Positions 33,523 through 63,726 of a stretch of 64,000 nucleotides of DNA are shown here, in pieces; the first letter of the stretch is position 1, and the number at the start of each line of letters is the position of its first letter. The notes below the pieces were generated by a model, which saw nothing but the letters and a program-made list of their open reading frames with translations, was not told where the DNA came from and did no database searches. The DNA comes from Laetmonice hystrix (Eukaryota), in the NCBI GenBank assembly GCA_965235115.1, contig OZ249436.1:30194001-30258000 (forward strand), in the 5' to 3' direction. The translations under genes and the position numbers were made by a program.

Positions 33523-34101
33523 ATATCCAAGACGTCACCACTGGTTTAGTATTTGTGGTCAATATCAACACGGATATGCGGCAGGACGATATCAGACAAC
33601 TCAAGACCCTAATCATCGACCTCATCCGACGAGACTTCGAATCAGGAACCACCTCGAAGAGAGTTGTGATGATCGTATTCGATTCACAAGCTCGCGTGGA
33701 GTTCCAGTATGACATCGAGACCTCCCAAGATTTGGGCCGAATTAACCAACTCGTAAATAACATCGCAGCACGAGGCAGAGGCACAAGAATCGCAGAGGGT
33801 CTGCGATTGGCCAGAGACACAATAGACACATTAATCCGAGACGGGGTCATAGACACCAGCAACATCTATCTACTGGTTGGCCGTCCGGACGACGACTCCC
33901 CAGGGACGATTCAGTTACAGAGTACTATACTCAGGGAACGAACCATCAGCGTCTTCCCCATCGGTTTCACCAACCTCGCTCGCCAAACTGACCTCGAGGC
34001 CGCAGCCACGTTTCCAAGTTATGTAGTTACTGCCTCGAGTCCAAGTTCATTAAACGTTACAAGGATAGTGTTTCTGTCGCGAACATTGGTGCTGATGGTT
34101 G
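33523..34101 (+). CDS. vWA domain 6 exon
   Basis: Reads GLVFVVN...RVVMIVFDSQARVEF...GTRIAEGL. Acceptor TGTAG, donor GTGAGT, phase 1-1. Confidence 0.9.
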
Positions 34102-35797: not shown

Positions 35798-36084
35798 GTG
35801 GCACCCTCTTGTCTTCCACTCCCAGGTATTTTGGGAACAACGTAACACTCAGGACTGCATACTTGCCCACTGGCGCTAAAAAGTCGTGGATAGACTTCGA
35901 AACCGAACTGCCGCCCGGATCGCTGCAAAGGTTCACATTTTTCGTTCACAACATTTCGTCGATATCCGAAGGTGTTGTACGCCTGCAGATTTGGCGGCCC
36001 GTCGATGTGATCGACTACGAGTTCCGGCTGGTGTGGGAAGCCCGACTTCGTGTTCAGACGGGACCCTTGGGCAACCTCTACACG
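35798..36084 (+). CDS. Unknown domain, N-terminal half
   Basis: TTTTTCCAG acceptor. Reads GGTLLS...FTFFV...VRLQIWRP...EFRLVWE. Phase-0 donor GTAGGT. Confidence 0.85.
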
Positions 36085-41456: not shown

Positions 41457-41673
41457 TATACTCTGCAAGATCCGTTTATCGTACAAGAAGGGGACCGGAT
41501 TGGGTGGACCTTTGAGAACACCTATGGAGTGATCAGCTTCCAGTACGTCGAAGGTCATAGAACTTATTTCCGAAAGGTCGACGACGACAACTTTCCGGCT
41601 GTCGGGCAGAGCTATATTTTCGACAACATACACTTGCCCAGTATTTTCTCTGTTGCTGCTGAAATCTTAGCAA
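41457..41673 (+). CDS. Unknown domain, C-terminal half
   Basis: TTTCAG acceptor, phase 0, matching the previous donor. Reads YTLQDPFIVQEGDRIGWTF...FSVAAEILA. Phase-1 donor GTAAGT. Confidence 0.87.
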
Positions 41674-41830: not shown

Positions 41831-41917
41831 CACCACCATCCGTTGGCGCGACTGGAGCTACTGGTGCTATTGGCCCTGTCGGACCCGTAGGTCCCATCGG
41901 ACCTGTTGGCCCTATAG
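41831..41917 (+). CDS. First collagenous exon ([25 protein letters not shown])
   Basis: GACAG acceptor, GTAAAA donor, Gly-X-Y register. Confidence 0.88.
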
Positions 41918-42058: not shown

Positions 42059-43096
42059 GGCCTGCAGGTCGTGATGGTGTCGGTGGCGGTGGCGGAGCAG
42101 GATTTCCGGGAGCAACTGGTGCGCGTGGTCCCGTCGGACCGCAGGGTCTTCCAGGGTCTCCGGGCACTCCCGGCCGGGACGGTATCGGGCGTCCGGGACC
42201 GATTGGTCCCATCGGACCGCCTGGACTACCCGGGAGAGACGGCGGTGGCGGTGGCGGCGACGGCGACGGCGGCGGCGACGGCGGCGGCCGAGGGGGCCAA
42301 CCAGGGAGAACAGGGGCGACGGGTCCGTTCGGCCCGGTCGGCCCTACTGGAGGGACAGGAGCGATTGGTCCAACCGGACCCACAGGGGCTACCGGCCCAG
42401 GTGGTCCAACCGGGCCAACTGGAGCCACTGGAGCCCGCGGTCCTTTCGGTCGAACGGGCGCCACTGGTCTTGGAGGCACTCCAGGTCGAGATGGTCGTCC
42501 AGGGAGTGACGGTCGTCCTGGGGTCCCAGGAACGATCGGAGCCACAGGGCGGCAGGGTCCACCAGGGACTCCCGGTGCAAGTATCCCCGGCCAAGGAACG
42601 GCTGGCACACCAGGACGGACTGGAGCATCGGGCGCTACCGGCCCTGGGGGTCCCACCGGCGGCACGGGCGCCACCGGTCCCACGGGACCAACGGGGGCAA
42701 CTGGTTCTGGTGGACCGACCGGTCCTACAGGTGCGACTGGAGCAAGAGGACGGGACGGGCGAACGGGAGCCAGTGGATCATTCGGGCCTGCTGGACCAGC
42801 TGGTGCAACTGGAATACAAGGTGTGCCTGGAAGAGATGGAGGCCCTGGAGGAAGAGGTCTACCCGGGCCTCCTGGACCCCGTGGAGACGGTGGCGAGGGA
42901 AGCATCGGGGCGACAGGGGCTCCTGGAGACCCTGGTAGAGCGGGAGCACCAGGCCGCCTAGGCCCGTCAGGCCCAACAGGAGGAACAGGTGCCATGGGGC
43001 CAACGGGACCAACTGGGTCAACTGGGTCGTCAGGGCCTACCGGACCTACAGGAGGTACCGGTGCAACTGGTCCGTTTGGCCGGACTGGTGCGACAG
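42059..43096 (+). CDS. Collagenous exon with interruptions and Gly/Asp-rich hinge (346 codons)
   Basis: AATAG acceptor, GTATGT donor. The antisense Pro-Val ORF 41997..43238 mirrors the Gly codons. Confidence 0.93.
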
Positions 43097-43304: not shown

Positions 43305-44933
43305 GTCTTCAAGGACGTCCTGGAGTTCAAGGCTTTACCGGATCAACGGGTCCCATCGGTGGAACCGGAGGATTTGGATCCACTGGGCCAAGAGGTCTAC
43401 CAGGGCCACCTGGCTCTGATGGAAGACCTGGCTTCACGGGCCCTCGGGGACCTCCCGGATCAGATGGAGCCCCGGGCCAGTCAGGACGTCCCGGATTTAC
43501 AGGATCGGCTGGTCCAGCAGGGAGACCTGGCAACGACGGCAGACCTGGCAACGACGGCAGACCTGGATCAACAGGGCCCCCTGGCAGGGACGGGCGTCCT
43601 GGAGGGCCGGGCGGTGCTGGACCATCGGGCCCCACGGGTGGGACCGGTGCGATTGGCCCCACGGGACCGACTGGGTCAACAGGAACAACCGGCCCGACTG
43701 GTCCTACTGGAGCTACTGGAGCGCGTGGACGTGATGGACGAACCGGAGCAACCGGTACGTCCGGTTCCCCAGGGCGCGAGGGCGGACCTGGTCCTGCCGG
43801 CGCTACTGGTCAGAGGGGGCCAGAGGGAGGGCGAGGATTGCCTGGCGCAACTGGAATACGGGGTGTTGACGGAGGAACTGGACAGCGGGGATTCCCTGGA
43901 GAAGCAGGACCTCAGGGAGGTAGAGGAGATCCTGGACCACGTGGCCCGCTCGGTTTTACTGGAGCAACTGGACCTCTAGGTCGACCCGGAGGACCAGGAC
44001 CGGGTGGAGCTCCAGGCAGACCAGGAGCTACAGGTCCACGAGGTGGACCAGGAGCCGATGGCCGACCAGGAGGACCAGGACCTTTTGGACCATCTGGGCC
44101 CACCGGAGGCACTGGAGCAAGAGGACCTACCGGTCCGACAGGATCTACGGGTGTCACAGGACCTACTGGGCCAACTGGTGGTACTGGAGCAACTGGACCG
44201 TTCGGAAGGACTGGGGCTACAGGAACACGGGGTCCGTTTGGTTTTACTGGATCGACAGGTCCAGCTGGACCCAGGGGACAGTCTGGTTTTCCTGGGGAGA
44301 CTGGGCGTCCTGGCCCAAGCGGCCCTCGTGGATTCACAGGAGCTACAGGCCCCCTAGGATTTACTGGAGCCACTGGTCGACGCGGAACCGATGGAAGGCC
44401 TGGTGAAACTGGTCCTCGTGGCCCCTCAGGAGGCCCTGGGGCTACTGGAATCTCGGGACGACCTGGTGCAACTGGTGCTACAGGCGGATTCGGCCAACCA
44501 GGACCAGCAGGCAGGCCAGGGTCAACTGGACCACTCGGTCCCACAGGAGGAACTGGTGCCACTGGACCCACTGGTCCAACCGGGTCAACTGGTACCACTG
44601 GTCCAACAGGGCCTACTGGAGGCACTGGTTCGACGGGTCCCGTGGGCAGAACGGGTGCAACAGGAGGTAGAGGCTTCCCAGGATTCACTGGATCAACTGG
44701 TCCCTCAGGCCAACCAGGTCGACCAGGATCAACTGGTCCACAAGGGCAGACTGGATCCACAGGTCCATCTGGTCCTCGTGGATTCACAGGAAATACTGGC
44801 CCGACTGGTGCAACAGGAATCCGCGGCAGAGATGGATTCACAGGGGCTACTGGTCGCCCTGGTCAGACTGGTAGTTCTGGCCGAGACGGCGCCACAGGAC
44901 CGAGAGGCCCGGAAGGACCAAGAGGGTTCCAAG
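43305..44933 (+). CDS. Collagen exon, 181 triplets
   Basis: ORF 43199..44941. TGCAG acceptor, GTATGT donor. Confidence 0.95.
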
Positions 44934-45092
44934 GTATGTAGTTTAACTAACAAGTCATCTACATCTGAAATAGTCTGGGATGACTCTTACTAGCTAGATA
45001 AGTCAGTTTACTATTTGGCCAGTTACCATTTATAACCATATATCGACCAATCACTCTTGAAACTTAGATGTAACCTATCCGTGTGATTTCAG

Positions 45093-46001
45093 GTGCAACT
45101 GGTTCAGTTGGTTCAACTGGCCGCTCTGGTCCGGAGGGTCCTCGTGGTTCGCCAGGTGATGACGGAAGTACCGGTCCCATGGGTCCAACTGGTGGTACCG
45201 GGGCGGCTGGTCCAACCGGACCTACGGGATCCACTGGAACCACTGGCCCAACTGGACCTACTGGAGGAACTGGAGTAACTGGTCCAACTGGACGGACTGG
45301 TGCTACCGGAAGTCGTGGTCGGCCAGGCTTCACCGGCGACAGAGGCCCTCAGGGATTTACAGGGGCATCAGGGCGTGATGGAAGGCCAGGCTTCACTGGT
45401 GCAACAGGACCACAGGGACGAACAGGAGAAACGGGCTCTACGGGCCGACCTGGTTTCGATGGAGCTACAGGACCAAGGGGCCAACAGGGTTTCACGGGAG
45501 GCATAGGACCGCGTGGGCCACAAGGATTTACGGGAAGTACCGGACCCAGCGGTGGCACTGGGTCGCCAGGAAGGACAGGTCCTGAAGGGCGACCTGGTAC
45601 CCCAGGCGGTGATGGACAAACTGGAGGTACTGGTGCCAGAGGCCCAACAGGTCCAACCGGCTCCACAGGTACTACGGGACCAACTGGGCCAACTGGAGGT
45701 ACGGGATCAACTGGCCCCACGGGTCGAACAGGAGCCACTGGAAGTATAGGTCGGCAAGGGTTTACGGGAACTACTGGACCAACTGGTCGTACTGGTGCTA
45801 CTGGTCGAGATGGTCGTCCCGGACAGACTGGGTCTACCGGTCGTCAGGGACCACAAGGCTTTACTGGTGCTACTGGACCAAGTGGTCCGCGAGGTTTTAC
45901 TGGTGGAACCGGCAGGGAAGGTGCTACTGGAGAGACTGGTCCACAAGGTCCTAGAGGATTCTCTGGTGGTACTGGAGATAGAGGACCAACTGGTTTCACC
46001 G
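45093..46001 (+). CDS. Collagen exon, 101 triplets
   Basis: ORF 45083..46045. TTCAG acceptor, GTAAGT donor. Confidence 0.95.
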
Positions 46002-46618
46002 GTAAGTCATGTCCTGTCGCGATGACCTTACCAGTCAGGCACTAATAGCTAATAGCTAATTATTGACGAAGGCATCTTATACGATATTTCCTTAACATTT
46101 CTTCTGAATAATATTTTCTAGAAAATTTGAACAAATGATGTCAAGTTACATACATACGTGTGAGTCTCCCTGAAATGCAGGTCCATTCCTAGGACTTGAA
46201 GTACGTTGTGTTGTATTAATATTTTTTCATAATCCTGTCCCTAATCCTAACCTTAACCGTAATCCATTTGTATTTTCTTAATTATATTGTCTTGTACAAC
46301 ATGTACCACGAAGTTGATGACCTACGACCTGCATAACCAAGGAATCCAGGTCCGGCGGATCTCCATTCCGGCGGACTTACATTCCGTTCACACCTGCTTA
46401 GTATTTGCAAATGAATATCAGCTTATATTACAACTTTTCTTTAGATACTACCCTAAGATAAGTTTTTATCTTGTCGAATATTTTCCTTTAAATACCCGAT
46501 GTTGTTTTCCCGTTATTTGTGCTGTTTGCTTGTGTTTTAACCTCCATGTGCGTTGCTATGTTACATTTACATGAGTTGTAGAAGGATTATTTTTAAATGA
46601 TACTTTTAAATCTTATAG

Positions 46619-47059
46619 GTTCCACGGGGCCGACTGGTTCCACTGGTCCTCGGGGCGGCGACGGACGTCCCGGTTCAGATGGAAGGCCTGGTTCCACTGG
46701 CCCATCTGGTCCAACTGGAGCAACTGGCAGAAGAGGACCCACCGGCCCGACTGGGTCTACTGGAACAACTGGACCTACAGGTCCAACCGGAGGCACTGGA
46801 TCAACTGGTCCAACAGGCAGAACAGGTGCAACAGGACCTCGAGGTCGCTTTGGATTCACTGGCGCCACCGGCCGACCCGGAGGCGATGGCCGACCTGGTG
46901 ACAGAGGGCCTGTCGGTAATACAGGAGCTACAGGACAGCGAGGATTTGATGGTTTCACTGGCCCCACCGGTCCAACAGGAGCAACCGGGAGACGTGGACC
47001 GGAGGGACCGGAGGGAAGAGACGGGGCTACTGGAATACGTGGACCCAGTGGATTTACTG
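46619..47059 (+). CDS. Collagen exon, 49 triplets
   Basis: ORF 46597..47157. TATAG acceptor, GTAAGC donor. Confidence 0.93.
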
Positions 47060-47182
47060 GTAAGCGATTTTCCTTGGTTATAAAAAGGCGTTTGTACGAC
47101 CCAATCAACTTTTTAGAAGTGTCTTACAGTTGTTTCTTTTCCTCGCCTCTTTACTAATTCAATTTCGTGCGTTTTATTTAAG

Positions 47183-47614
47183 GATCAACCGGACGTCCAG
47201 GGCCAATAGGTGCAACTGGTCAATTCGGTTCAGATGGTCGCCCAGGAACTCCAGGATCAACAGGACCGTTAGGACCCACTGGAGGCACTGGAGCTACTGG
47301 ACCAACTGGACCTACTGGAATAACAGGTTCTACTGGGCCTACTGGGCCTACTGGAGGAACTGGTTCCACAGGGCCCACGGGAAGGACAGGAGCAACAGGT
47401 GTCCGTGGACCGCAAGGATTTACTGGATCATCTGGTCCAAGAGGCTTTGTAGGAGAAACTGGATCTACTGGCCCGGTCGGTCGTACTGGAGCAACTGGTA
47501 GAGATGGAAGAGATGGAGCAACTGGATTAACTGGACCTAGAGGATTTACAGGATCAACTGGCCCGACTGGATTTACTGGTTCAACTGGACCCCAAGGACG
47601 CGACGGCCGCCCAG
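47183..47614 (+). CDS. Collagen exon, 48 triplets
   Basis: Read manually as Gly-X-Y. TTAAG acceptor, GTATGT donor. Confidence 0.92.
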
Positions 47615-47779
47615 GTATGTAAAGCATCTAGCATAGTTCCCTTACTTTAGTTCTACATCGTTGTTTTCTTTCGTCCTGCCAGTATTGACTAAAAAATGTT
47701 GGCTCTAAATATTGATGAATGAACTCGTTTAAGAGCTAAGGGTTAAAATTTGGCGTTCATCAATATCTATTTTCTTTAA

Positions 47780-48220
<441 letters not shown>

Positions 48221-48444
48221 TGATCATTGTTTATGAACGAAAGGGAAAGTTTAAGTGCTTTTCTGCAGCTTCGAATAGCTTATCCCGCTAAGATACGCCG
48301 CTACTCTTATTACCAGTGGGTATTTTAGTGTAATACGCCTATAAATGATCTGAAATCTGATGCTGAATAAAAGAAGAAAGTAAAAACTCTACTTCAAAAA
48401 TACTCCAGTAGGCATGTAAAGAATGCCATTGTAATTGCTCACAG

Positions 48445-49029
48445 GTTCGACTGGTCCGGTTGGAAGTACTGGCTCGACTGGTCGACAAGGTCGGGATGGG
48501 TCTACTGGAGCCATAGGCCCAACTGGTCCCTTTGGTTTTACTGGATCAACTGGACCGTCTGGTCCAACAGGAGCAACTGGGCGTAGGGGTCCAACCGGCC
48601 CTACGGGCTCTACTGGTACAACTGGACCGACCGGCCCAACAGGAGGAACGGGTTCAACTGGTCCAACTGGACGGACCGGAGCGACAGGTTCGAGAGGACC
48701 CCAAGGATTCACGGGAAACACCGGACCTGAGGGACGTACTGGTGCATCAGGCCGGGACGGACGCCCTGGAACCACTGGTGCAACCGGTCCTATCGGTTCA
48801 ACAGGCCGTGACGGTCGGCCCGGATTCACTGGTGCCACTGGGCCCTCGGGTCGAACAGGCGCCACTGGTCTGAGAGGCCGTGAAGGATTCACAGGGTCGA
48901 CGGGTCCGACAGGGAACACTGGCGCGACGGGTCGGGACGGTCGTCCAGGCCGGGACGGTGCGACTGGATTAACGGGTCCAGGCGGCAGGCCTGGAGCCAC
49001 AGGTCTCTCCGGTCCAGATGGAAGACCTG
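48445..49029 (+). CDS. Collagen exon, 65 triplets
   Basis: ORF 48435..49061. CACAG acceptor, GTGAGT donor. Confidence 0.93.
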
Positions 49030-49245
49030 GTGAGTGTTTTTCTACAACGTCACACACCTAGTACTCTGTTTAGATGGAATTAATAAGATATTATAAATGA
49101 TCTACTCGAGGACTTGAAAGTCGTCCAGTTATACAAAATAATGAATAATATATTCCAATTGCAGTTTTCTTTATACATTTTGCATTATGATAATATGAAA
49201 CTCCCTACTGAGTTTAACCGCTTCCATATTCTTTCTGTGATACAG

Positions 49246-49794
49246 GGAGGCCAGGGTTTACTGGAGCGACTGGTCCAGGTGGTCGGGAAGGCCGTGACGG
49301 AGCAACTGGATCCACTGGACCCAGCGGCCCAACTGGTGCAACTGGTTCCCGTGGCCCAACCGGCCCAACAGGTTCAACTGGAACAACCGGTCCTACAGGT
49401 CCAACTGGAGGAACTGGTTCTACAGGACCCACTGGACGAACTGGAGCAACAGGAATGAGAGGTCCTGAAGGTCAGACAGGTGCAACTGGCCGGGACGGCC
49501 GACCTGGATTTACGGGTTCGACTGGGCCCACCGGCAGGACTGGAGCTACTGGCAGACAAGGACGTGACGGATTTACTGGAGCCACTGGTCCACAGGGCCC
49601 GCGGGGAGAGACGGGTGGAACTGGCCGCGAAGGCTTCACCGGAGCCACAGGACCGACGGGTAGAAGTGGTGCCACTGGTCGGCAAGGTCCTCAAGGATTT
49701 ACCGGCAGGCCTGGACGTGACGGTAACACTGGATCTACAGGTCGTGTCGGACGGACCGGCGGCACTGGAGCAACTGGTCCAACTGGATTTACAG
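49246..49794 (+). CDS. Collagen exon, 61 triplets
   Basis: TACAG acceptor. Weak GTACCA donor placed where Gly-X-Y ends. Confidence 0.88.
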
Positions 49795-50358
49795 GTACCA
49801 TGGAGATTGAGCAACATTTTTATAACTAATACCCTGATACAATACATCTTACCTGAGGTTACAAACAGTAAGCAACCATATGATAAATCAGGCCATATCA
49901 TTCATGATAGTGTCCTAGCAATATAGCACAATATTATAGAAAGTGGCCCAAAAGACGCAACGGCATACCTAGCCATATGGGGGACCTAAATCATTGATTT
50001 GAATTCGTTGAGGAATTTTTGTTTAAAGGAGAATGACATCAAGAACTCCTGATTCGATTCAGTGGTATTGATTTTAGAACCATTTTACTGAAGCAAAGTA
50101 ATGGCCATTTGATCTTGGCTGAATGGAATAGAAATGACCATGATCCATGTCATAGCTAATTAATTGTTCAATGACACCAAAGGGAATCAGTATGATGTAA
50201 TGACGTGCTGTTGAAAGGGGTGCTCTCGGATTGCGCTAGAATGATTAGGGAGACAGTTGGGGCCAGATGTATGGTTCTCATCTACATCAAAACAGCCACA
50301 AAAATGGCTCTAGAATCAAAACCACTCAACCGAATCAGTGGTGTTCTTGGTGTCAGTC

Positions 50359-50526
50359 NNNNNNNNNNNNNNNNNNNNNNNNNNNNNNNNNNNNNNNNNN
50401 NNNNNNNNNNNNNNNNNNNNNNNNNNNNNNNNNNNNNNNNNNNNNNNNNNNNNNNNNNNNNNNNNNNNNNNNNNNNNNNNNNNNNNNNNNNNNNNNNNNN
50501 NNNNNNNNNNNNNNNNNNNNNNNNNN
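50359..50526. other. Assembly gap (168 N) inside an intron
   Basis: Run of N. Confidence 1.
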
Positions 50527-50666
50527 TATATGGCAGACGTGCGCCGTTGCGTCTTTTTAGGTCCCCTATAAAACGAGTTTTAGTCCGATTCAAGCTGGCC
50601 CATACTTTATAACCGTAAGTCTATTGATGAATGTAATTTGACAAGCAAAGCAACTTTGTTCTTAAG

Positions 50667-50882
50667 GATCTACTGGCCCAATGGGAGCGACTGGAAGGGA
50701 GGGCCCTTCTGGTCCACAGGGACGAGATGGATCCACTGGATCCACTGGACCAGGTGGCCCAACTGGTGCAACTGGTTCCCGTGGCCCAACCGGCCCCACT
50801 GGTTCAACTGGAACAACCGGTCCTACAGGTCCAACTGGAGGAACTGGTTCTACAGGACCCACTGGACGAACTGGAGCAACAG
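50667..50882 (+). CDS. Collagen exon, 24 triplets
   Basis: TTAAG acceptor, GTGAGA donor. Confidence 0.9.
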
Positions 50883-51047
50883 GTGAGAAAACAATGAAGA
50901 GAAATTAAAAATGTAAGTCTAAGAAATCGTTAGAGTCCTTAAGAAACTTTCAAGGTTTGAACAATTTGAAACAGTTACATCTTTTATATTTAAAATACAT
51001 GAGGATTATTTGATTTCAATATACATTACGTAATGTTTTCGTCTCAG

Positions 51048-51452
51048 GTTCACGGGGACCCCAAGGATTCACTGGAACAACTGGGCCGACTGGTCGTACT
51101 GGTGCTACTGGATTCCCTGGTCGTGACGGTGCCACTGGTCTCCGTGGACCGCAGGGACCGCGAGGTTTCACTGGAGGGACCGGCGGGAGAGGTGACACTG
51201 GTACTACTGGACCGACAGGTCGCACTGGAGGCACAGGAGCCAGAGGTCCCACCGGCTTCACCGGCTCAAGAGGTCCTGAGGGACGGGTGGGCGCTACGGG
51301 TCCTCAAGGACCTCGTGGTTTTACTGGCGGCCCCGGACGAGACGGGAGAACAGGAGCGACTGGACGGCAAGGATTTTCTGGTGCGACTGGTCCGCAGGGA
51401 CCACGTGGTGAGACTGGAAGTACAGGACCCGGAGGACGACCGGGCGGCCCAG
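51048..51452 (+). CDS. Collagen exon, 45 triplets
   Basis: CTCAG acceptor, GTATGC donor. Confidence 0.92.
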
Positions 51453-51683
51453 GTATGCATTTTATAATCTTCATGGGAAAGTAGGAACATAATCAGAAAA
51501 TATGTTAGAAATAACGTATGAAACAGTCTATACTTGACAGATGTCACATGCAGATGATTTTGGATGTTTATTTTTCAACGTCAAAGCTAGGTACTTGATT
51601 TTACATATTGTATTATGCCTGTTGGGCACAAGTGTTAATTCCCATGAAAACGCAAAGTGAAAAGACACATGACCTCATTCCAG

Positions 51684-51845
51684 GCCGTGATGGTGACACT
51701 GGCGCTACTGGACCCAGCGGACCACAGGGAAGGGAAGGCTTCACTGGTCCCAGAGGACCTGAGGGTTTCACTGGTGCAACTGGTCCAAGTGGTCCCACTG
51801 GAGCAACAGGTCGTGCCGGACCTACTGGGCCAACCGGCTCCACAG
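51684..51845 (+). CDS. Collagen exon, 18 triplets
   Basis: TCCAG acceptor, GTTAGT donor. Confidence 0.9.
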
Positions 51846-51998
51846 GTTAGTGTCTCGTCCATTCCTTGTTTCAAGGCGATTTCGGTTATCGTAAACAAAT
51901 AATGCTAAATTTGTAGCTTGGATGTCACCTTCTCTACCGATCACTGATGATTGATATCTTTAAGAAGCCAATTCCTAACACGCCTCAAATAATTTTAG

Positions 51999-52484
51999 GT
52001 ACAACTGGTCCGACTGGCCCCACTGGTGGCACTGGATCAACTGGCCCCACTGGAAGAACAGGAGCCACTGGTAGAAGAGGACCTCAAGGTTTGACGGGAG
52101 CCACAGGACCGACAGGCCGGACAGGAGGGACAGGTCCTCAGGGACGTACCGGATTTACAGGATCCACAGGACGACCTGGATTTACTGGAGCTACCGGTCG
52201 TGACGGGCGCAGTGGGGCAACTGGTTCCACTGGTCCGACTGGATTTACAGGTTCTACAGGCCCTCAAGGTCCGCGAGGTTTCCAGGGAGGAACTGGACGT
52301 GAGGGTCCAAGAGGCCAGACTGGCAGCACAGGTTCTACAGGTCCAGGTGGACCCATTGGTGCCACCGGGTCTACTGGTCCAGGCGGTCAGCCAGGAAGGG
52401 TTGGAGGTACAGGTGCCACTGGTGTACCTGGACCCACTGGACCAAGGGGATTTGATGGCGGAACAGGCCGTGACGGCTTTACAG
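51999..52484 (+). CDS. Collagen exon, 54 triplets
   Basis: TTTAG acceptor, GTACTT donor. Confidence 0.9.
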
Positions 52485-52593
52485 GTACTTAGCTTCATTA
52501 TTTACTGGAAATATTAATTCATTGCTGTCGTTTGCTGAATACCGTCATATACCCATAGGCCTACACGCATTTATGACATGATTTCGTTTTAAG

Positions 52594-52935
52594 GTGCAAC
52601 TGGTCCTTCTGGACCAACTGGTGCCACTGGCGGTAGAGGGCCTACCGGTCCCACTGGCTCAACCGGGACAACCGGTCCAACTGGCCCTACTGGAGGTACT
52701 GGATCAACTGGACCCACCGGCCGAACTGGTGCTACTGGCAGGCAGGGACCGCAAGGAGTTACTGGAGCGACGGGCAGAGACGGCCGCGATGGAAGGACCG
52801 GCGGAACTGGTTCCACGGGACCGAGCGGGCGGACTGGTTCAACTGGACCGCAGGGACCAAGCGGCTTCACCGGATCTACTGGTCCTACCGGTCGCACTGG
52901 TGCTACGGGCTTCCAAGGTCGACCCGGGTTTACAG
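52594..52935 (+). CDS. Collagen exon, 38 triplets
   Basis: TTAAG acceptor. Weak GTGCTG donor placed where Gly-X-Y ends. Confidence 0.85.
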
Positions 52936-53186
52936 GTGCTGACATTGGTCAAAATATTAATAATGGTTAAAATCACCTGATAAAAATTTGAAAGGGTCCA
53001 CAATTTAGTTTGTTCCTATAATACAATGTGCAGTTGAATCTCATCCTTGAAGATTTGACGCTTTGGTATCTTTGAATCAGGTACACCCTCCCCCGTCCCT
53101 CAATCTGAAGCCATCAAGCTACACAATAGTGTATCCATACTCAAATAGATAAAACATAATTAAGTCTTTCTCCAACATGTTAAAAG

Positions 53187-53375
53187 GCGCACCTGGTCGG
53201 GACGGCCGCCCTGGAGAGACTGGATCAACGGGTCCTACCGGACGTACAGGAGGCACTGGTAGAGAAGGTCCGCGTGGGTTCAGTGGTGCACCCGGCCGTG
53301 ATGGACGTCCTGGAGACCCTGGACGAGAAGGTCGGCCCGGATTCACGGGGGCCACTGGACCAACAGGATTCACAG
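53187..53375 (+). CDS. Collagen exon, 21 triplets
   Basis: ORF 53177..53434. AAAAG acceptor, GTGGGT donor. Confidence 0.87.
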
Positions 53376-53668
53376 GTGGGTGTCACAAACATGGGACTAA
53401 ATTGGTTTATTTATACCTGCCAAAAATATCTTAAGTCAACCAGTGATGGCAAATAACTTTGGTATTTCGTTCTTAATGATTGAAGTGTCCGCTAGGGGTT
53501 AGTCTAGTCATCTCTAGATTGGTAGGTCCTATGTCGGACTGATTCTCATGGTTTAATATCTTTATAGTGCCCGTTTTCTATTAACAAGCATTGTCATTGT
53601 TTTTGACATATCAAGATATTTTTCCTGTCGAGCGATGTACACTCTGTAACAATGTTGTTCTATTTTAG

Positions 53669-54514
53669 GATCAACGGGTCCCATTGGAGCTACGGGATCC
53701 ACTGGTCGTGGAGGACCGACAGGAGCAACTGGAAGCACTGGCCCTGGCGGACGCACTGGAAGTACTGGTTTAACTGGTCCAACAGGACCCACTGGATCAA
53801 CTGGATCAACTGGTCGCCAAGGACGGACTGGCGCCACTGGATCTACCGGTCGAGAGGGCGCCACTGGACTGACGGGTCGTCCTGGACCTTTTGGTGCAAC
53901 TGGATTACCAGGCCGGGCAGGTCCGGAAGGAAGGGACGGTTCAACGGGTGCAATCGGGCCATCCGGTCCAACCGGAGCGACTGGGCGTTCGGGACCGACT
54001 GGGCCCACAGGAGCAACAGGAGGAATTGGGCGTCAAGGCAGGACCGGTGGAACAGGATCAACTGGTCCTACAGGAAGAACTGGTTCCACTGGGTTGACGG
54101 GTCGACCAGGTACTTCAGGCGCGAGAGGTGCTACTGGAATCCGTGGACCTGAAGGTTTTACTGGATCTACAGGTCCGACAGGTCGCACTGGAGCAACTGG
54201 TCTGAGAGGTCCAGGTGGCTTCACAGGTGCAACAGGTCGGCCAGGGTTCAGAGGTGATACAGGATCAACGGGTCCGTCAGGTCGAACTGGAGCCACAGGA
54301 AGACTGGGCCCGTCGGGTTTCACTGGATCGACTGGGCCGACTGGTCGAACTGGTGCCACCGGCCCGCGAGGTTTTGATGGCAGGGATGGGCGCACAGGAG
54401 GCACTGGGGCGACTGGTCCCGGCGGCCGAACCGGGGCAACAGGACCGACTGGACCGCAAGGCTTCACAGGGTCCACTGGACGGGATGGGCGGCCTGGACG
54501 TGATGGAGCCACAG
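53669..54514 (+). CDS. Collagen exon, 94 triplets
   Basis: TTTAG acceptor, GTTCGT donor. Confidence 0.9.
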
Positions 54515-54881
54515 GTTCGTTTTCACACTTGAGCAGGGTATATTAATTAGTGATTCAAATGTCACGCTCTCGCGTCTGGCGAGGGCCACAAGGTAGAATT
54601 AGTGGTTCTAATTTTATGACAACTAATAATTAGTTGTTGTCATAAAAAATTGGTTATCAGTAGTTATTAAGACGGGTCTCAGTGAAAAGAAAAATGCTTC
54701 GTTCCATGAATTGAAATTTACTTACCGAAGATATAATAAATTAATATAAAGGCAAATGTTGAGGGGTATAAATAACAAAGGAGCGCAGTCATGTTATGTT
54801 CTTTGGTCTAACATTGCAAATCTGTTTTACTTTATGTCGACCCATATGCAAACCTATTATAAATGATGCGGTTGTTTTCAG

Positions 54882-55673
54882 GATTAACTGGGCCCCGTGG
54901 TGGACCTGGATTCGCTGGAGCCACCGGCCCCAGCGGCCCAACTGGTGGTACTGGTGCTACTGGTCCCTCAGGGCGCACAGGTTCTACAGGCTTAACTGGT
55001 CCGTCCGGCCCAACAGGAGGTACTGGATCAACTGGTCCCTCAGGGCGCACAGGAGCTACTGGAAGCATCGGCGCCTCTGGTTTCCCTGGACGGGATGGAG
55101 ATACAGGCTCAACTGGTCGACAGGGCCCTCGAGGCTTCACTGGAGCCACTGGTCCCCTTGGTAGAACGGGTGCAACTGGCCGCCCAGGTGCAACGGGAAG
55201 AGATGGACGAGATGGTCGCACCGGCGGCACTGGCGCTACTGGCCCGACTGGGTTCACTGGAAGAACTGGGCCAACTGGAAGAACTGGAGGCACTGGAGCC
55301 ACAGGCCGAGACGGCCGCACGGGCGCAACCGGCTCAACGGGAGAACGTGGTTTCACGGGATCCATTGGGCCCTTGGGTCCACAAGGATTTACTGGTTCAA
55401 CTGGTCCCGCAGGCCGCACCGGCGGCACGGGAAGCACTGGTTTCCCGGGCCGAGACGGTCGTCCTGGAGATACTGGAGCAACTGGCCGACCAGGCTTCGA
55501 TGGAGCCACTGGCCGGGAAGGGCGCGATGGCAACACGGGCGCTACTGGAAGGCCAGGTCTGGATGGCAGGCCTGGGTCCACTGGGCCCACGGGACGAACG
55601 GGGGCCACTGGACGCGACGGCCGCGATGGGTCCACAGGAGCTACGGGACGATCCGGGCAGACTGGTGGAACTG
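54882..55673 (+). CDS. Collagen exon, 88 triplets
   Basis: ORF 54863..55684. TTCAG acceptor, GTATGT donor. Confidence 0.93.
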
Positions 55674-55985
55674 GTATGTGGTAGTTATATCTTAACAAGC
55701 TACTGGTTAAACAGTAATATTTATAATACTGACTTTCTATACTTTCAATTAGTTACTTCAAAAACCTGTCTATAAACACAAAAGTAAAGGCAATCCCAGC
55801 AAAATAACAAACTAACATGCAATATTCGCATTTCCTTAATTGTCTTAATTGCCTTACTTATAACGTGAAGGAGTGTAGGTCTCCAGTAGTTCCACTGAAA
55901 AAATATAGAATGATGCTATTTTTTCTAAAGCTGAAGTTCATAAATAATTTCAAGAAATACTCAAGTAAATCTTTCTTTTGAACAG

Positions 55986-58154
55986 GTGCGACTGGTCCAT
56001 CTGGCCAAACTGGAGCCACTGGTCGTATAGGACCAGGAGGGCCGACAGGCGCGACTGGTGCCATAGGTCGTGACGGAAGAACAGGAGGTACCGGGTCCAC
56101 TGGCCCGACTGGTAGGACTGGAGCCACTGGTGGTTTTGGAGCTACAGGAAGGCCTGGCATTGACGGCCGACCTGGCCGAGATGGAGACATTGGTTCCACG
56201 GGTCCAACGGGACAGACAGGTGGAACTGGATTCCCTGGACGGCGAGGACCTACTGGAAGTACAGGAACCACTGGTCCAACGGGACGCACTGGAGCTACGG
56301 GACGTGACGGAAGACCGGGTATCACTGGGGTACCAGGACGCGATGGCCGCCCTGGGTTCTCGGGAGCTACAGGTTTCCCAGGCCGTGACGGTAGGCCTGG
56401 AAACGATGGCGATCGGGGCCGACCTGGCGATACGGGCTCAACTGGCAGAATTGGGCCTGAAGGACGCACGGGAGCAACAGGACCCCAGGGACCTCTAGGC
56501 TTCACTGGAACCACAGGCCCAACTGGTCCGACTGGTGCTACGGGTAGATCTGGACCCACCGGTCCAACAGGTGCGACGGGCTCGACTGGACGACAAGGTC
56601 AGACTGGCGGGACTGGAGCAACAGGTCCTGGTGGTCGCACTGGTGGCACTGGAGCTACTGGTGAAACTGGTCGGCAAGGAAGGGACGGGTTCACAGGAGC
56701 AACAGGACCGTCAGGTCGCACTGGTGCAACAGGTATCCAAGGTCCGCGAGGATTCTCGGGTGCCCCTGGACGAGATGGACGCACGGGTGGTACTGGTAGA
56801 CCTGGATTCCAAGGCCGAGATGGATTCACTGGAGCTACTGGCCCGCAAGGAAGAACTGGTGCCACAGGTGAAACTGGCCGACCAGGTCGAACTGGAACCA
56901 TAGGTGCGACCGGTTTTATCGGACCTCAAGGCCCCAGCGGCTTTACTGGATCGACTGGCCCCACGGGAAGAACAGGTGCTACTGGTAGAGATGGTCGCCC
57001 AGGACCTACTGGAAGGACTGGTGCTACTGGACGTGACGGACGACCCGGAAGAACTGGGGGCCTCGGAGCAACTGGTTTCACAGGCCGAACTGGTGCCACT
57101 GGATTAGAGGGAGCCACTGGGCGGGAAGGAAGACCAGGACGACCTGGAGATCCAGGATTCACTGGGACTACTGGACCTACTGGCCGCACGGGTGCTACGG
57201 GTTCCCCTGGTCGTGATGGTCGCCCAGGACCTCAAGGATTCGCAGGAGCCACAGGTCCTCAAGGGCGCACTGGAGGCACTGGTGCGACTGGGCGAGATGG
57301 AAGGGATGGACAGACTGGTGCAACCGGACCCTCTGGTCCAACTGGTGCCACAGGCAGAATTGGACCAAGTGGACGAACTGGAGGTACTGGGTTCACTGGA
57401 CCGACTGGACGGACCGGTGCTACTGGTTCGACAGGAAGACCTGGTCAGACTGGAGCCACGGGTGGCCCAGGAAGAGATGGTCGCACAGGAGGTACTGGTG
57501 CAACAGGTGAAACCGGTCGACCTGGTAGCGATGGACGTGATGGTGCTACCGGCCTAACAGGACGTACAGGTGCAACTGGTGGTTTTGGAGCTACAGGTCG
57601 CGACGGTCGCAGTGGAGCAACTGGTTTCCCAGGACGGGATGGTCGTGATGGATTTACTGGATCTACTGGTCCCACAGGACGCACTGGAGCGACGGGTGCT
57701 CCAGGCCGTGACGGAGCTACTGGAGGCAGGGGCTTTGATGGCAGAACAGGTGGAACTGGTGCAATTGGACCAACGGGACCCACAGGTGCTACTGGCCCTC
57801 GTGGTATCGGAGGTAGAACAGGAGGAACTGGTGCTACTGGTCCTGGTGGAAGGACTGGAGCTACAGGTTCAACTGGTAGGACTGGAGACCAAGGATTCAC
57901 TGGGTCAACTGGCCCAACTGGACGCACTGGTGGCACTGGGTCTACTGGGCGACCTGGACGTGATGGATTCACTGGCTCCACCGGTCCTGAAGGTCGCTCT
58001 GGTGCTCCTGGCCGACAAGGTTTCACAGGTTTTCCTGGTCGTGACGGTTTTACAGGAGCCACGGGACCTTCAGGCAGAACAGGGGCAACTGGTTCAACCG
58101 GTCGGGAAGGTCCACAGGGACGACCAGGTTCAACTGGTCTTACTGGATTTACAG
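55986..58154 (+). CDS. Collagen exon, 241 triplets (largest, 2169 nt)
   Basis: AACAG acceptor, GTATAA donor. Gly-X-Y frame spot-checked. It is absent from the ORF track, probably because it lacks an in-frame start codon. Confidence 0.9.
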
Positions 58155-58474
58155 GTATAAGTCGCAAAATGTACAAGGAATTACAATTACTTAAAATAAT
58201 TAATTCCAATATATAGGGAGGCACTTCTATAACATTTAAGTGATTATGACACCGCAATGTTGTTACACCACTCATTCTACTTAATATTGAAAATATTGAA
58301 ACTTATGTATAATAGAATTGTTCACTAATCATGCAAATAAACAGTGCCTTTTTCACTAATCTTCACAAATTGGACGAAATAAATTACACATAAAGAACTC
58401 GGCATTTGATCTCGGGCTAAAGTTTAACACAGAATGGGTGGCCTGATATTAGCTGACATTTTACTTTGTTGTTA

Positions 58475-59721
<1,247 letters not shown>

Positions 59722-59869
59722 GTACGAACAGTTCATACTATACCTAACGCAAATAATGATTGAGGTGTACGTATTTTGTTTAGGTACGGCTAATGGAATG
59801 AGGATTTAATCATACCCAAATATCTATATTGTATTTAAGTAAAAAAAAATACTTATCTGAATGTTATAG

Positions 59870-61534
59870 GTGCATCTGGACGTGATGGAAGAACTGGTGC
59901 AACTGGACGTGATGGAAGATCTGGTGCCCAGGGTCAAACAGGTTCAACTGGTCCAGTTGGTCCAGAGGGTAGGTCAGGCGCCATTGGACGCACCGGTTTC
60001 ACTGGTCCAACTGGCCGTACGGGAGCCACCGGTTCTACTGGACCCACTGGTCGCACGGGTGCAACAGGAAGAAGAGGAAACTCTGGAGCTACTGGAAGCA
60101 CTGGTTTCCCTGGACGAGACGGCCGCCCTGGATTCACGGGCGGCACCGGTTCCACTGGTAGAACAGGTGCTATTGGTTCAACTGGTTCCACTGGACCGAC
60201 TGGGCGGACAGGTGCTACTGGATCTACGGGACCTGTTGGTCGCACAGGCCGAACAGGTGCAACTGGTTTCACTGGTCGCTCAGGTGCAACTGGATCAACT
60301 GGTCCTACAGGCCGAACAGGAGCCACGGGCTCAACTGGAAGAGACGGACGTGATGGTGCAACTGGTAGTACCGGAATGACTGGAGCGTCAGGTTTCGCGG
60401 GACGAACTGGGGGCACTGGAGCCACTGGTCCAACTGGAAGGACTGGAGCAACGGGATCGTCAGGACCAACGGGTAGAACCGGAGCGACTGGGTCCACCGG
60501 TCCTGGAGGTAGAACTGGATCAACTGGAGCCACTGGAGCTCCTGGATTCCAAGGTCGAACTGGATCCACAGGTGCAACTGGAAGAGATGGCAGAGATGGT
60601 AATACCGGTTCGACTGGTCCAGAGGGAAGAACCGGGGCAACTGGTCCATCTGGTAGGACCGGAGCGACTGGTCGTGACGGCAGGATTGGCGCCACTGGTT
60701 TCTCAGGACGGGATGGCCGGGATGGCTTCACTGGTTCAACTGGTCCAACTGGAAGGACTGGTGCCACGGGAGGCACTGGAGCAACAGGTTTCCCAGGAAG
60801 GCAGGGTCTCACTGGAGCGACTGGATCAACTGGTAGAGATGGTAGAGATGGATTCACGGGTTCAACTGGTCCTACGGGTAGAACTGGAGCTACTGGATCT
60901 ACCGGTCCCATTGGTCTGCCTGGACGAGATGGTCGCACTGGAGGTATTGGTGCTACGGGTTTCACTGGTAGAGACGGATTTACAGGATCTACTGGACCCA
61001 CTGGACGAACTGGTGCAACTGGTAGCAGTGGAGCCACTGGAGTTCCCGGAAGAGATGGTCGCACAGGTGGCATCGGAGCAACAGGTTTCTCAGGAAGGGA
61101 TGGATTCACTGGATCGACGGGTCCCACTGGAAGAACAGGGGCCACTGGAGCAACAGGTGTGGCTGGTCCTAGAGGTTTTGATGGATTCACCGGAGCAACA
61201 GGCAGGGATGGCCGCACAGGAAACCCCGGTGTCACGGGCTCCACTGGACCTACTGGTAGAACAGGAGCAACTGGGTCGACAGGAGCAACAGGTATTAGGG
61301 GTCGGGATGGTGTCACTGGAGCAACTGGGCCGACAGGGCGAACCGGTGCAACAGGAGTAACGGGACCGACAGGTCGAACTGGAGCAACCGGTTCTTCAGG
61401 ACCTACGGGCAGAACGGGAGCGACTGGTTCTACAGGTCTGAGTGGTCGAACTGGAGCAACTGGCCAAACTGGACCCCGTGGAAGAGATGGCCGGACGGGA
61501 GCACTTGGACCCTCTGGAATGACAGGATCTACAG
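59870..61534 (+). CDS. Collagen exon, 185 triplets
   Basis: TATAG acceptor, GTGAGT donor. ORF 60376..61605 covers the 3' part. Confidence 0.93.
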
Positions 61535-61743
61535 GTGAGTTTCTTCAGGCATGTGTAATGTCAACAATACATGATAATATATTGTTAGATGTTTTGTATC
61601 CTTGATACATAGTCAGATGTCAAGGGTTTATAATGTGGCTGATACCATCTGGAACTCCGACTTCTTTTGTAGTAGTAGAACAGGGTTCCTTAAATCATTA
61701 TACCAACATACATACTGAGAGATCTGCTTCATAATGACTCCAG

Positions 61744-62724
61744 GTCCGACTGGAAGGACGGGAGCCACTGGCTCCACGGGTGGCTCTGGTCGCGATGGCA
61801 GAAGTGGCGCCACAGGATCTACTGGATTCCCTGGTCGCGAAGGATTTACAGGCGCTACTGGACCAACTGGGCGAACTGGTGCAACTGGTAGCACTGGAAG
61901 ACAAGGTTTACCAGGTCGACAAGGATTTACTGGATCGTCTGGTGCCACTGGTCGCGAGGGTCCAACAGGCCGAACCGGCGCCACTGGATTCACAGGTAGG
62001 CCTGGAATACAGGGACGCGACGGTTTCACAGGCGCTACCGGTTTTCCAGGTCGGGACGGCCAAACGGGAGGAAGGGGAGCCACCGGTTTCTCAGGTGCCA
62101 CAGGTGCGACCGGACCAACGGGTCGCACAGGCGCCACTGGACTCCGTGGAAGCACCGGTTTCACTGGAGAGCGCGGAAGAACAGGTGCCACCGGAGCCAC
62201 TGGTGATCGTGGTTTCGATGGATTTACTGGTGCTACTGGACCCACCGGGAGAACAGGCGCTACTGGTTCAACGGGTGTGCGTGGACCTTCTGGGTTCACC
62301 GGTAGCACCGGTAGAACTGGTGCAACTGGTTCTACAGGTCGGGATGGATTCACGGGTGCAACTGGTCCGTCCGGGCGCACAGGAGGCTCCGGAGCTACTG
62401 GCTTCCCCGGACGGGATGGTTCAACTGGTGCTACAGGAAGAGACGGGGCTACCGGACCGACAGGCAGGACTGGTGCAACTGGAACAACTGGGCCAACTGG
62501 CCGCACGGGCGCGACGGGATCGTCGGGTCCCACTGGCCGCACGGGCGCCACCGGGTCAACTGGTCCGTTCGGTCGGACGGGAGCCACTGGTTTTACTGGA
62601 CCGAGGGGAGAGCGTGGTTTTGATGGTGGTAAGGGTGACACTGGATCACGGGGTTTCACTGGTCGTACTGGTGCCACCGGCCCCGCCGGACCCCCAGGTC
62701 CTGTCATCGCAGGCGATATTGGAG
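61744..62724 (+). CDS. Last collagen exon, helix ends [15 protein letters not shown]
   Basis: ORF 61734..62813. TCCAG acceptor, GTAAGA donor. Confidence 0.93.
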
Positions 62725-62920: not shown

Positions 62921-63079
62921 AATATGAAGCCAACCTATGTCGGGACAAGCAGTGTGACAGCGAGTGTCAGACAGCAGTTACTGTGTCCGGATTTAACCGA
63001 ACGATCGTCATCGCCTTCTGTATGTGTGACGTGCCAGGTCTGGGCAAGATCCGGCTACCTGACGGACAGAGGTGTTCAG
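62921..63079 (+). CDS. EGF-like domain 1 exon (atypical spacing)
   Basis: Six Cys: CRDKQCDSEC...FCMC...QRC. GACAG acceptor, GTGAGT donor, phase 1-1. Confidence 0.85.
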
Positions 63080-63534: not shown

Positions 63535-63726
63535 ATGTGAGGATCTGCGAATACAACTACGGAGACTGCGAGCAAATCTGTACTCCAGTCCAAGGTTTCA
63601 ACCAGAACCACTGTAGCTGCTACCCTGGCTTCGTACTCTCTGACAACAAACGGAGCTGCCTGCCCGTCGGTGTCGGGCCAACCTTCCAACCCAGGCCCGG
63701 CGGTGCCGACTTCCTCTTCGGACATA
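63535..63726 (+). CDS. EGF-like domain 2 exon; gene continues past window
   Basis: Reads CEYNYGDCEQICT...CSCYPGFVLSDNKRSC. CTTAG acceptor, GTGAGT phase-1 donor with no stop codon. Confidence 0.9.

What the first reader, a model, noticed from the sequence alone, without database searches (positions are those of the whole stretch)
43305..62702. About 1,600 apparently uninterrupted Gly-X-Y triplets with Thr rather than Pro/Hyp at Y
Seen: 18 consecutive exons sum to 1,496 triplets, plus about 106 in the last exon. [15 protein letters not shown] and GGT dominate; 22 of the first 30 triplets of exon 58480 have Thr at Y and only 3 have Pro. Established: O-glycosylated Thr at Y can replace 4-Hyp as helix stabiliser, as reported for Riftia cuticle collagen and (Gly-Pro-Thr)n glycopeptides. 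Inference: this is a heavily O-glycosylated, low-hydroxyproline rod needing a dedicated Thr glycosyltransferase.
Basis: partly seen in the sequence, partly recalled or inferred. Interest (0 to 1): 0.8.

Follow-up and report, generated by a model that had tools for sequence, protein, structure and literature searches.

The report
Membrane-anchored giant threonine-rich worm collagen
The stretch is the rod-forming core of one expressed worm gene for a collagen about 1.5 micrometres long that has threonine where other collagens have hydroxyproline, and the whole protein carries binding domains at its far end and a membrane anchor at its near end.

Summary
Nineteen phase-1 exons (43305-62724) give 1,603 unbroken Gly-X-Y triplets. 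Thr fills 59% of Y positions and Pro 9%.

The unbroken run starts 21 triplets earlier, in the preceding exon, so it has 1,624 triplets. The whole helix has 1,722 triplets, about 1.5 µm. Only 7 of them are Gly-Pro-Pro.

The N gap lies inside an intron between two phase-1 exons. The frame is therefore safe, but a hidden exon cannot be excluded.

A stop-free model of 37 exons (about 6,970 aa) reads: signal peptide, six VWA domains, an unnamed jelly-roll "head", the helix, four or five EGF-like modules, one transmembrane helix and a 95-residue cytoplasmic tail. The last four exons lie just beyond the window. Spliced contigs from a run of the same sample confirm five junctions at the 3' end.

The gene differs from this genome's two ~8,700-residue cuticle collagens, where Thr at Y is only 2-4%. 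In length, terminal globule and Thr content it resembles the Riftia cuticle collagen, which has glycosylated Thr.

Thr glycosylation, and a dedicated transferase for it, are plausible but cannot be tested here.

The scan has already reported C-terminally anchored giant collagens on other DNA of this genome. This is a third, differently built one, and a shorter paralogue with the same layout exists.

The parts
17620..17683 (+). Proposed exon 1: ATG and a 21-residue signal peptide, phase-1 donor GTAAGG
   Evidence: Hydrophobicity scan and DNA reading. Its phase fits the VWA1 acceptor. Inferred; there is no RNA evidence for it.
25830..26474 (+). VWA domain 1 exon
   Evidence: Pfam VWA E=2.9e-09; AG/GT sites, phase 1-1.
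27847..28506 (+). VWA domain 2 exon
   Evidence: Pfam VWA E=7.2e-10; phase 1-1.
29409..29996 (+). VWA domain 3 exon
   Evidence: Pfam VWA E=1.4e-16; phase 1-1.
30835..31398 (+). VWA domain 4 exon
   Evidence: Pfam VWA E=3.5e-16; phase 1-1.
31978..32523 (+). VWA domain 5 exon
   Evidence: Pfam VWA E=1.3e-23; phase 1-1.
33523..34101 (+). VWA domain 6 exon
   Evidence: Pfam VWA E=8.9e-13; phase 1-1.
35798..36084 (+). Head domain, first exon (no Pfam family)
   Evidence: 177 relatives at E<=0.001 among 1.84 billion proteins; aligned with full-length relatives.
41457..41673 (+). Head domain, second exon; a jelly-roll beta-sandwich together with the first exon
   Evidence: Alignment. A model of a relative has pLDDT 79. 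Fold matches to phage capsid and tail-tip jelly rolls and to lectin/CBM domains.
41831..41917 (+). First collagen exon (8 triplets after TPPSV)
42059..43096 (+). Collagen exon with six short breaks, relatively rich in Pro at Y and in Gly-Pro-Pro; its last 21 triplets open the unbroken run
   Evidence: Pfam Collagen E=5.7e-25; breaks mapped; composition gradient.
43305..49794 (+). Seven collagen exons: 43305-44933, 45093-46001, 46619-47059, 47183-47614, 47781-48185, 48445-49029, 49246-49794. Together 550 triplets, no break
50359..50526 (.). Assembly gap inside the intron 49795-50666
   Evidence: Both flanking exons are phase 1, and the flanks of the gap hold no Gly-X-Y coding.
50667..58154 (+). 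Nine collagen exons: 50667-50882, 51048-51452, 51684-51845, 51999-52484, 52594-52935, 53187-53375, 53669-54514, 54882-55673, 55986-58154. Together 623 triplets, no break
58480..62724 (+). Last three collagen exons: 58480-59721, 59870-61534, 61744-62724. Gly-X-Y ends at 62705, followed by IAGDIG
   Evidence: Pfam Collagen E=5.2e-55 for 58479-59720. Spliced contigs confirm the junctions 59721>59870 and 61534>61744.
62921..63079 (+). EGF-like module 1 (six Cys, no Pfam match)
   Evidence: Spliced contig joins 62722|62919 and 63077|63533; sequence reading.
63535..63726 (+). EGF-like module 2 plus a short linker; donor at 63726
   Evidence: Pfam cEGF 27.5 bits against a cut-off of 26.6. The spliced contig ends this exon at 63726 and continues into the exon at G000:C1:30258491.

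Best explanation
What it is. The finding is the collagenous core of one expressed gene. The gene runs from window position 17620 to about 3.1 kb beyond the window end, at G000:C1:30261134.

The protein, about 6,925-6,972 residues, reads in order:
- a cleavable signal peptide;
- six VWA domains;
- an unnamed jelly-roll head domain that resembles lectins and carbohydrate-binding modules;
- a collagen domain of about 5,190 residues (1,722 triplets, the last 1,624 unbroken, about 1.5 µm);
- four or five EGF-like modules;
- one transmembrane helix;
- a 95-residue cytoplasmic tail ending in T-R-L.

Shown. The exon structure, the composition, the domains, and transcription and splicing of the 3' part.

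Inferred.
1. Three identical chains form a rod that is basic and has no Lys, Cys or Tyr.
2. The rod has almost no Gly-Pro-Hyp sites. By analogy with the Riftia cuticle collagen, it is held together mainly by O-glycosylated Thr at Y.
3. The rod stays tethered to the secreting cell, most likely an epidermal cell, or is shed from it.
4. It presents the VWA and head domains about 1.5 µm away from the membrane, where they tie the cell surface to the cuticle or matrix.
5. The Pro-at-Y and Gly-Pro-Pro sites are concentrated in the first 200 triplets next to the head. This suggests that folding starts at the N-terminal end.
For: Gene model. 37 exons, all with AG/GT sites, all phases compatible, 20.9 kb of coding sequence without a stop.

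Transcription. A contig of run X4 lacks the introns. It joins 61531|61741, 62722|62919 and 63077|63533, then runs from 63726 into the start of the exon at C1:30258491. A second contig joins 59723 to the start of exon 59870. The DNA run X1 covers the introns.

Domains. Six VWA. Collagen. EGF-like modules at 39.9 and 39.6 bits against a cut-off of 33.4. A 24-residue hydrophobic helix followed by RRWRR, then the tail.

Composition. Thr is 59% of Y. There are 7 Gly-Pro-Pro triplets in 1,722. Pro at Y falls from 18-24% to 4-10% along the rod while Thr at Y rises from 30% to 72%.

A different class from the cuticle pair. This genome's giant collagen pair at C21 has about 2,900 triplets per gene, with only 1.6-4.5% Thr at Y.

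The layout recurs. The head domain is followed directly by Thr-rich collagen in an Owenia protein and in a metagenomic protein. A paralogue at C1:51.745-51.762 Mb has head, Gly-X-Thr collagen (44% Thr at Y), EGF-like modules and a transmembrane helix.

Precedent. Papers quote glycosylated Thr as a helix stabiliser in Riftia cuticle collagen, and report that Ac-(Gly-Pro-Thr)10 folds only when galactosylated.
Against: - No data here show glycosylation, hydroxylation, trimer state, tissue or subcellular place.
- The 5' half of the model (signal-peptide exon, links between the VWA exons, and the VWA-to-head link) rests on splice phase and proximity alone.
- One exon (EGF3) is skipped in the only transcript contig seen.
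- The gap may hide exons.
- The head-trimer prediction gave no verdict.
- The Riftia figures of 1.5 µm length, terminal globule and Thr content are quoted from my memory of Gaill et al. 1991 and Mann et al. 1996. I could not open either paper.
- Orthology to the Riftia protein was not tested.
Confidence: 0.6

Rival explanations
1. Same gene and same rod, but Thr is not glycosylated, or only sparsely. Stability would come from the great length, Pro at X (21%), Arg and Arg-Asp pairs, and the terminal domains, as in bacterial and phage Gly-X-Thr collagen-like proteins that lack hydroxyproline.
For: The nearest sequence matches to an exon are bacterial and phage collagen-like proteins with the same Gly-X-Thr bias. 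Arg is 24% of X, and GRD occurs 102 times.
Against: Unglycosylated (Gly-Pro-Thr)10 does not fold, according to the paper read. Only 7 Gly-Pro-Pro triplets are present, and 68% of triplets lack any Pro. From my own knowledge, annelid cuticle collagens are generally O-glycosylated on Thr and Ser.
Confidence: 0.2
2. The membrane anchor is only a biosynthetic handle. The ectodomain is cut off and becomes a free fibre-forming cuticle collagen, the direct counterpart of the extractable 1.5 µm Riftia molecule. On this view it is not a permanent tether between cell and matrix.
For: The computed length of about 1.48 µm and the globular N-terminal end fit my recollection of the extracted Riftia molecule. 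Earlier notes of this scan describe anchors on the 2.5 µm cuticle collagens too.
Against: There is no dibasic or furin-type site between the helix and the membrane (sequence read). A 95-residue cytoplasmic tail with a PDZ-type ending suggests a lasting intracellular link.
Confidence: 0.3
3. The long unbroken helix is an assembly or annotation artefact, or the gene is dead.
For: A gap lies inside the gene, and collagen repeats are prone to misassembly.
Against: The open frame is intact over 37 exons. The sequence is diverged and non-tandem. An independent DNA contig spans 3.7 kb of it, and spliced transcript contigs exist.
Confidence: 0.03

Closest known systems
Riftia pachyptila cuticle collagen (Gaill et al. 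1991; Mann et al. 1996)
   Same: Thr rather than Hyp dominates the Y positions. It is a very long single helix of about 1.5 µm with a globule at one end (figures quoted from memory). It has low imino acid content and comes from an annelid.
   Different: Only peptide sequences of the Riftia protein were published, and no gene or domain plan is known to me. Here the full plan is seen: six VWA, head, EGF-like modules, transmembrane helix and tail. Glycosylation is shown for Riftia and is not shown here. Orthology was not tested.
Giant (about 8,700-residue, 2.5 µm) annelid cuticle collagens, such as the C21 pair of this genome and the alvinellid and earthworm proteins in PMC12403961
   Same: They are giant unbroken helices in annelids. 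According to earlier notes of this scan, they also carry a C-terminal membrane anchor.
   Different: Their Y positions hold Ala, Pro and Arg, with only 1.6-4.5% Thr. They are about 1.7 times longer. By the earlier notes they have no EGF-like modules, and their tail is unrelated.
Vertebrate membrane collagens (XIII, XVII, XXIII, XXV) and collagenous receptors (MARCO, SR-A)
   Same: A collagen helix on a membrane-spanning chain.
   Different: Those are type II proteins, with the N-terminus inside the cell and a signal anchor, and their helices are short and interrupted. This one has a cleavable signal peptide and a C-terminal anchor, and its helix is 10-20 times longer.
VWA-bearing collagens (VI, VII, XII, XIV, XXII, XXVIII)
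   Same: An array of N-terminal VWA domains ahead of a triple helix.
   Different: No FN3 or Kunitz modules were seen. The helix is far longer and Thr-rich. The protein is membrane-anchored.
Bacterial and phage collagen-like proteins with Gly-X-Thr repeats (such as BclA of the Bacillus exosporium)
   Same: Thr at Y, and no dependence on Hyp. BclA Thr residues are glycosylated. A jelly-roll globular domain sits next to the helix.
   Different: This is an animal gene with 36 introns, a signal peptide, VWA and EGF-like modules and a transmembrane helix. The likeness is in composition only. The head's likeness to such globular domains is only a lead.

Membership tests
Collagen triple-helix proteins | Long runs of Gly-X-Y with Gly at every third residue | tested here: met
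   1,722 triplets, the last 1,624 unbroken. Pfam Collagen E=5.2e-55.
Riftia-type Thr-rich cuticle collagen | Thr is the commonest Y residue and Hyp-forming Pro at Y is scarce | tested here: met
   At Y, Thr is 59.1% and Pro 9.2%. There are 7 Gly-Pro-Pro triplets.
Riftia-type Thr-rich cuticle collagen | A single helix of about 1.5 µm with a globular domain at one end | tested here: met
   1,722 triplets at 0.86 nm each give about 1.48 µm. Six VWA domains plus the head sit at the N-terminal end. The Riftia figures are quoted from memory.
Riftia-type Thr-rich cuticle collagen | Y-position Thr carries O-linked galactose | not testable with these tools
   This needs glycoproteomics.
Riftia-type Thr-rich cuticle collagen | Located in the cuticle; sequence matches the published Riftia peptides | not tested
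   No tissue data are available. Mann et al. 1996 is not held. No siboglinid orthologue could be fetched: a Ridgeia head-domain gene has no collagen nearby.
Type II membrane collagens (XIII/XVII/XXIII/XXV) | N-terminal cytoplasmic domain and signal anchor, with the C-terminus outside the cell | tested here: not met
   The model has an N-terminal signal peptide. A C-terminal helix is followed by RRWRR and a tail. This is the opposite orientation.
VWA-bearing collagens (VI, XII, XIV and relatives) | VWA domains flanking a short or interrupted helix, often with FN3 or other modules | tested here: inconclusive
   Six VWA domains are present. No FN3 was seen in the exons scanned. The helix is of a different order of length, so this is a resemblance only.
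Giant 2.5 µm annelid cuticle collagens | About 2,900 triplets with Ala, Pro and Arg at Y | tested here: not met
   Here there are 1,722 triplets with Thr at Y. The C21 pair has 1.6-4.5% Thr at Y.

The most novel reading that the evidence does not exclude
Annelids have a second, undescribed class of giant collagens. These are type I membrane-anchored rods of about 1.5 µm with a VWA and lectin-like head, and their helix is built on Thr instead of hydroxyproline. This gene class would be what lies behind the glycosylated-Thr cuticle collagen purified from Riftia in the 1990s. If so, the worm cuticle would be laid down from rods that are born tethered to the epidermal cell membrane.
Probability: 0.4. 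Interest if true: 0.8.

Novelty: new variant of a known kind. Interest (0 to 1): 0.66.

Why it matters
A triple helix stabilised by Thr has been known since 1996, but only from peptides of one vent worm. I know of no published gene, domain plan, folding start or modifying enzyme for it.

A complete gene model in a chromosome-level genome makes several of these questions testable:
- which glycosyltransferase is co-expressed with the gene;
- how a helix of about 4,900 unbroken residues with almost no Gly-Pro-Hyp nucleates and zips up;
- whether giant cuticle collagens are assembled while tethered to the cell.

The C-terminal anchor is the reverse of all described membrane collagens. It now appears in at least two unrelated giant collagen types in this animal. 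The Hyp-free, Lys-free and Cys-free rod is also of interest as a design for recombinant collagen materials.

Tried and rejected
- Exon search for orthologues. A 723-residue exon searched against 5.8 billion proteins returned only bacterial, phage and metagenomic Gly-X-Thr collagen-like proteins. This is a likeness of composition and is no use for orthology.
- Length filter. The protein search's length limits made full-length animal orthologues unreachable. A search with the Owenia head region found only three Owenia proteins.
- RNA runs. Two searches listed no run on record as RNA. The small run X4 nevertheless proved to hold spliced contigs.
An upstream open frame on one of them gave no VWA match.
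- A Ridgeia (vestimentiferan) head-domain gene has no collagen within 10 kb.
- The head homotrimer prediction gave no verdict, with a score of 0.04 against a mark of 0.32. It is not evidence either way.
- Foldseek likeness of the head to the TNF/C1q family is weak, with E about 0.01 and TM 0.2-0.4. The Atlas lead to domains associated with phage and BclB collagen-like proteins scored below 0.9.
- There is no long-range periodicity of charge, Phe or Pro along the rod.
- The cytoplasmic tail has no relative in the C21 cuticle collagens.
- Mann et al. 1996 could not be opened.
Full report
**Observation**

A scan of all six frames for Gly-X-Y runs found 26 runs on the + strand between 41845 and 62705 and essentially none elsewhere. 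Every run from 43304 on begins at the G of an AG acceptor and ends at an in-frame G|GT donor. Every exon length is a multiple of nine.

The 18 exons 43305-61534 hold 181+101+49+48+45+65+61+24+45+18+54+38+21+94+88+241+138+185 = 1,496 triplets. The last exon adds 106 more.

The spliced translation has no stop, and Gly is first in all 1,603 triplets.
- Y positions: Thr 59.1%, Pro 9.2%, Asp 8.2%.
- X positions: Arg 24%, Pro 21.5%, Ala 16.5%, Ser 12%, Phe 9%.
- The count of 22 Thr and 3 Pro in the first 30 triplets of exon 58480 is exact.

The sequence is not a simple tandem array. Only 2-5 copies of degenerate 18-72 bp units are found, and all four Thr codons are used.

**The gap**

N 50359-50526 lies 565 bases after the donor of exon 49246-49794 and 140 bases before the acceptor of exon 50667-50882. 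Both junctions split a Gly codon after its first base. Neither flank of the gap holds Gly-X-Y coding in any frame.

The frame is therefore kept whatever the gap holds. A whole exon could still be hidden there, so the count is a lower bound, and 'uninterrupted' applies only to what was read.

**Extent of the helix**

The helix starts earlier than the finding says. Exon 41831-41917 and exon 42059-43096 are collagenous as well (Pfam Collagen). Six short breaks lie in the first 98 triplets.

The last 21 triplets of exon 42059-43096 join the run, which makes it 1,624 unbroken triplets. The whole helix has 1,722 triplets in about 5,190 residues. At 0.86 nm per triplet that is about 1.48 µm.

**The whole gene**

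Upstream on the same strand lie six exons that each encode one VWA domain (Pfam E from 1e-9 to 1e-23). After them come two exons of a domain without a Pfam family. A short exon at 17620 encodes a classic signal peptide and ends in a phase-1 GTAAGG donor.

Downstream there are two EGF-like exons inside the window. I fetched the next 20 kb of the genome and found three more EGF-like exons. Two of them pass Pfam's cut-off.

The final exon encodes a 24-residue hydrophobic helix, then RRWRR, then a 95-residue acidic, Ser-rich tail that ends in T-R-L before the stop.

All 37 exons have AG/GT sites and compatible phases. Joined, they give 20.9 kb of open frame, or 6,972 residues. The topology is type I: N-terminus outside the cell, C-terminal anchor.

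The 5' half of this model rests on splice phase and proximity only.

**Expression**

No run is on record as RNA. One small run from the same sample, X4, nevertheless holds contigs that lack the introns.
- One 2,769-base contig lies on 61018-61531, 61741-62722, 62919-63077 and 63533-63726 without the stretches between.
- That contig then continues into letters that equal the start of the exon at G000:C1:30258491.
- Another contig ends at 59723 with loose letters that equal the start of exon 59870.
- X4 has no depth over the introns, whereas the DNA run X1 covers them.

This confirms five predicted junctions. It also moved the EGF2 donor from my first guess to 63726, and it shows that the EGF3 exon is skipped in that transcript.

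**How this gene relates to other collagens of the genome**

Earlier notes of this scan describe two neighbouring collagens of about 8,650 residues with C-terminal anchors on another chromosome. They are thought to be the 2.5 µm cuticle collagen.

I fetched that region. It holds about 2,900 triplets on each strand, with Ala, Pro and Arg at Y and only 1.6-4.5% Thr. The present gene therefore belongs to a different class. Its tail is also unrelated to theirs.

A shorter paralogue at C1:51.745-51.762 Mb has the same plan: head, Gly-X-Thr collagen (44% Thr at Y), EGF-like modules and a transmembrane helix.

**The head domain**

It has 177 relatives at E<=0.001 among 1.84 billion proteins. Those that carry a name are unnamed proteins of the annelids Owenia and Ridgeia.

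In an Owenia protein and in a metagenomic protein the head is followed directly by collagen, and the Owenia one is rich in Gly-X-Thr.

A model of a full-length relative (pLDDT 79, pTM 0.81) is a jelly-roll sandwich.
- Its best structural matches are a cyanophage capsid protein (Z 11.8) and a mycobacteriophage tail tip (Z 11.3).
- Lectin-like and carbohydrate-binding modules follow at Z 6-10.
- Likeness to the TNF/C1q family is weak.
- A trimer prediction gave no verdict.

**Mechanism**

Only 7 of 1,722 triplets are Gly-Pro-Pro. Six of these lie in the first 200 triplets, next to the head. No Pro at all is present in 68% of triplets.

Pro at Y falls from 18-24% to 4-10% along the rod, while Thr at Y rises from 30% to 72%. 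The helix has one Lys, no Cys, Tyr, His or Trp, and a net charge of about +286.

Such a rod lacks the usual stabiliser. Papers read here state two things:
- glycosylated Thr takes over that role in the Riftia cuticle collagen;
- Ac-(Gly-Pro-Thr)10 folds only when galactosylated.

I therefore think it most likely, at about 0.6, that the Thr residues here are O-glycosylated and that this holds the rod together. The Pro-rich N-terminal end next to the head is the likeliest place for folding to start. Both points are inference.

The anchor and tail suggest a rod that is born tethered to the cell, and perhaps stays so. The tail ends in a PDZ-type motif, and there is no furin-type site between the helix and the membrane. 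On this reading the rod presents its VWA and head domains about 1.5 µm out from the cell.

**Comparison with what is known**

By my recollection of Gaill et al. 1991 and Mann et al. 1996, which I could not open, the Riftia cuticle collagen is about 1.5 µm long, has a terminal globule and holds roughly 18-20 mol% Thr. This protein has 20.3 mol% Thr in the unbroken run.

The Alvinella genome paper lists giant collagens by length and Pro content. It notes none of that length in siboglinid gene sets, and it does not describe a Thr-rich class. I found no description of a gene or domain plan for a Thr-based giant collagen, nor of type I anchored collagens.

The verdict is a new variant of a known kind. 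The chemistry has a precedent, but the gene architecture and the anchoring do not.

Noticed in passing
window 40393-41264: A minisatellite inside the 5.4 kb intron between the two head-domain exons. The unit is 42 bp, with about 21 copies at 88% match, and there is a higher-order period of 127 bp.
   Followed up: partly
window 26651-27011: An 84 bp unit repeated 4.3 times at 97% identity, in the intron after the first VWA exon.
   Followed up: no
G000:C1:51745000-51762000 (loci L023, L024), minus strand: A shorter paralogue with the same plan: head domain, many small exons of Gly-X-Thr collagen (457 triplets seen, 44% Thr at Y), EGF-like modules and a transmembrane exon.
   Followed up: partly
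G000:C1:2874451-2882363 and C1:21864082-21865084: Further copies of the head domain. The first lies 8 kb from a weak match to this gene's transmembrane and tail exon. These may be the 'globular head on a short collagen stalk' membrane proteins that the scan noted earlier.
   Followed up: no
G000:C1:234001-244000 (locus L025): An odd open frame of 284 triplets that reads mostly Gly-Ser-Thr and Gly-Cys-Lys. It is probably a simple repeat rather than a collagen.
   Followed up: no
G000:C1:30258288-30258428 (locus L021:288-428): An EGF-like exon (EGF3) with good splice sites that passes Pfam's cut-off, yet is skipped in the one transcript contig seen. It is possibly an alternative exon.
   Followed up: partly
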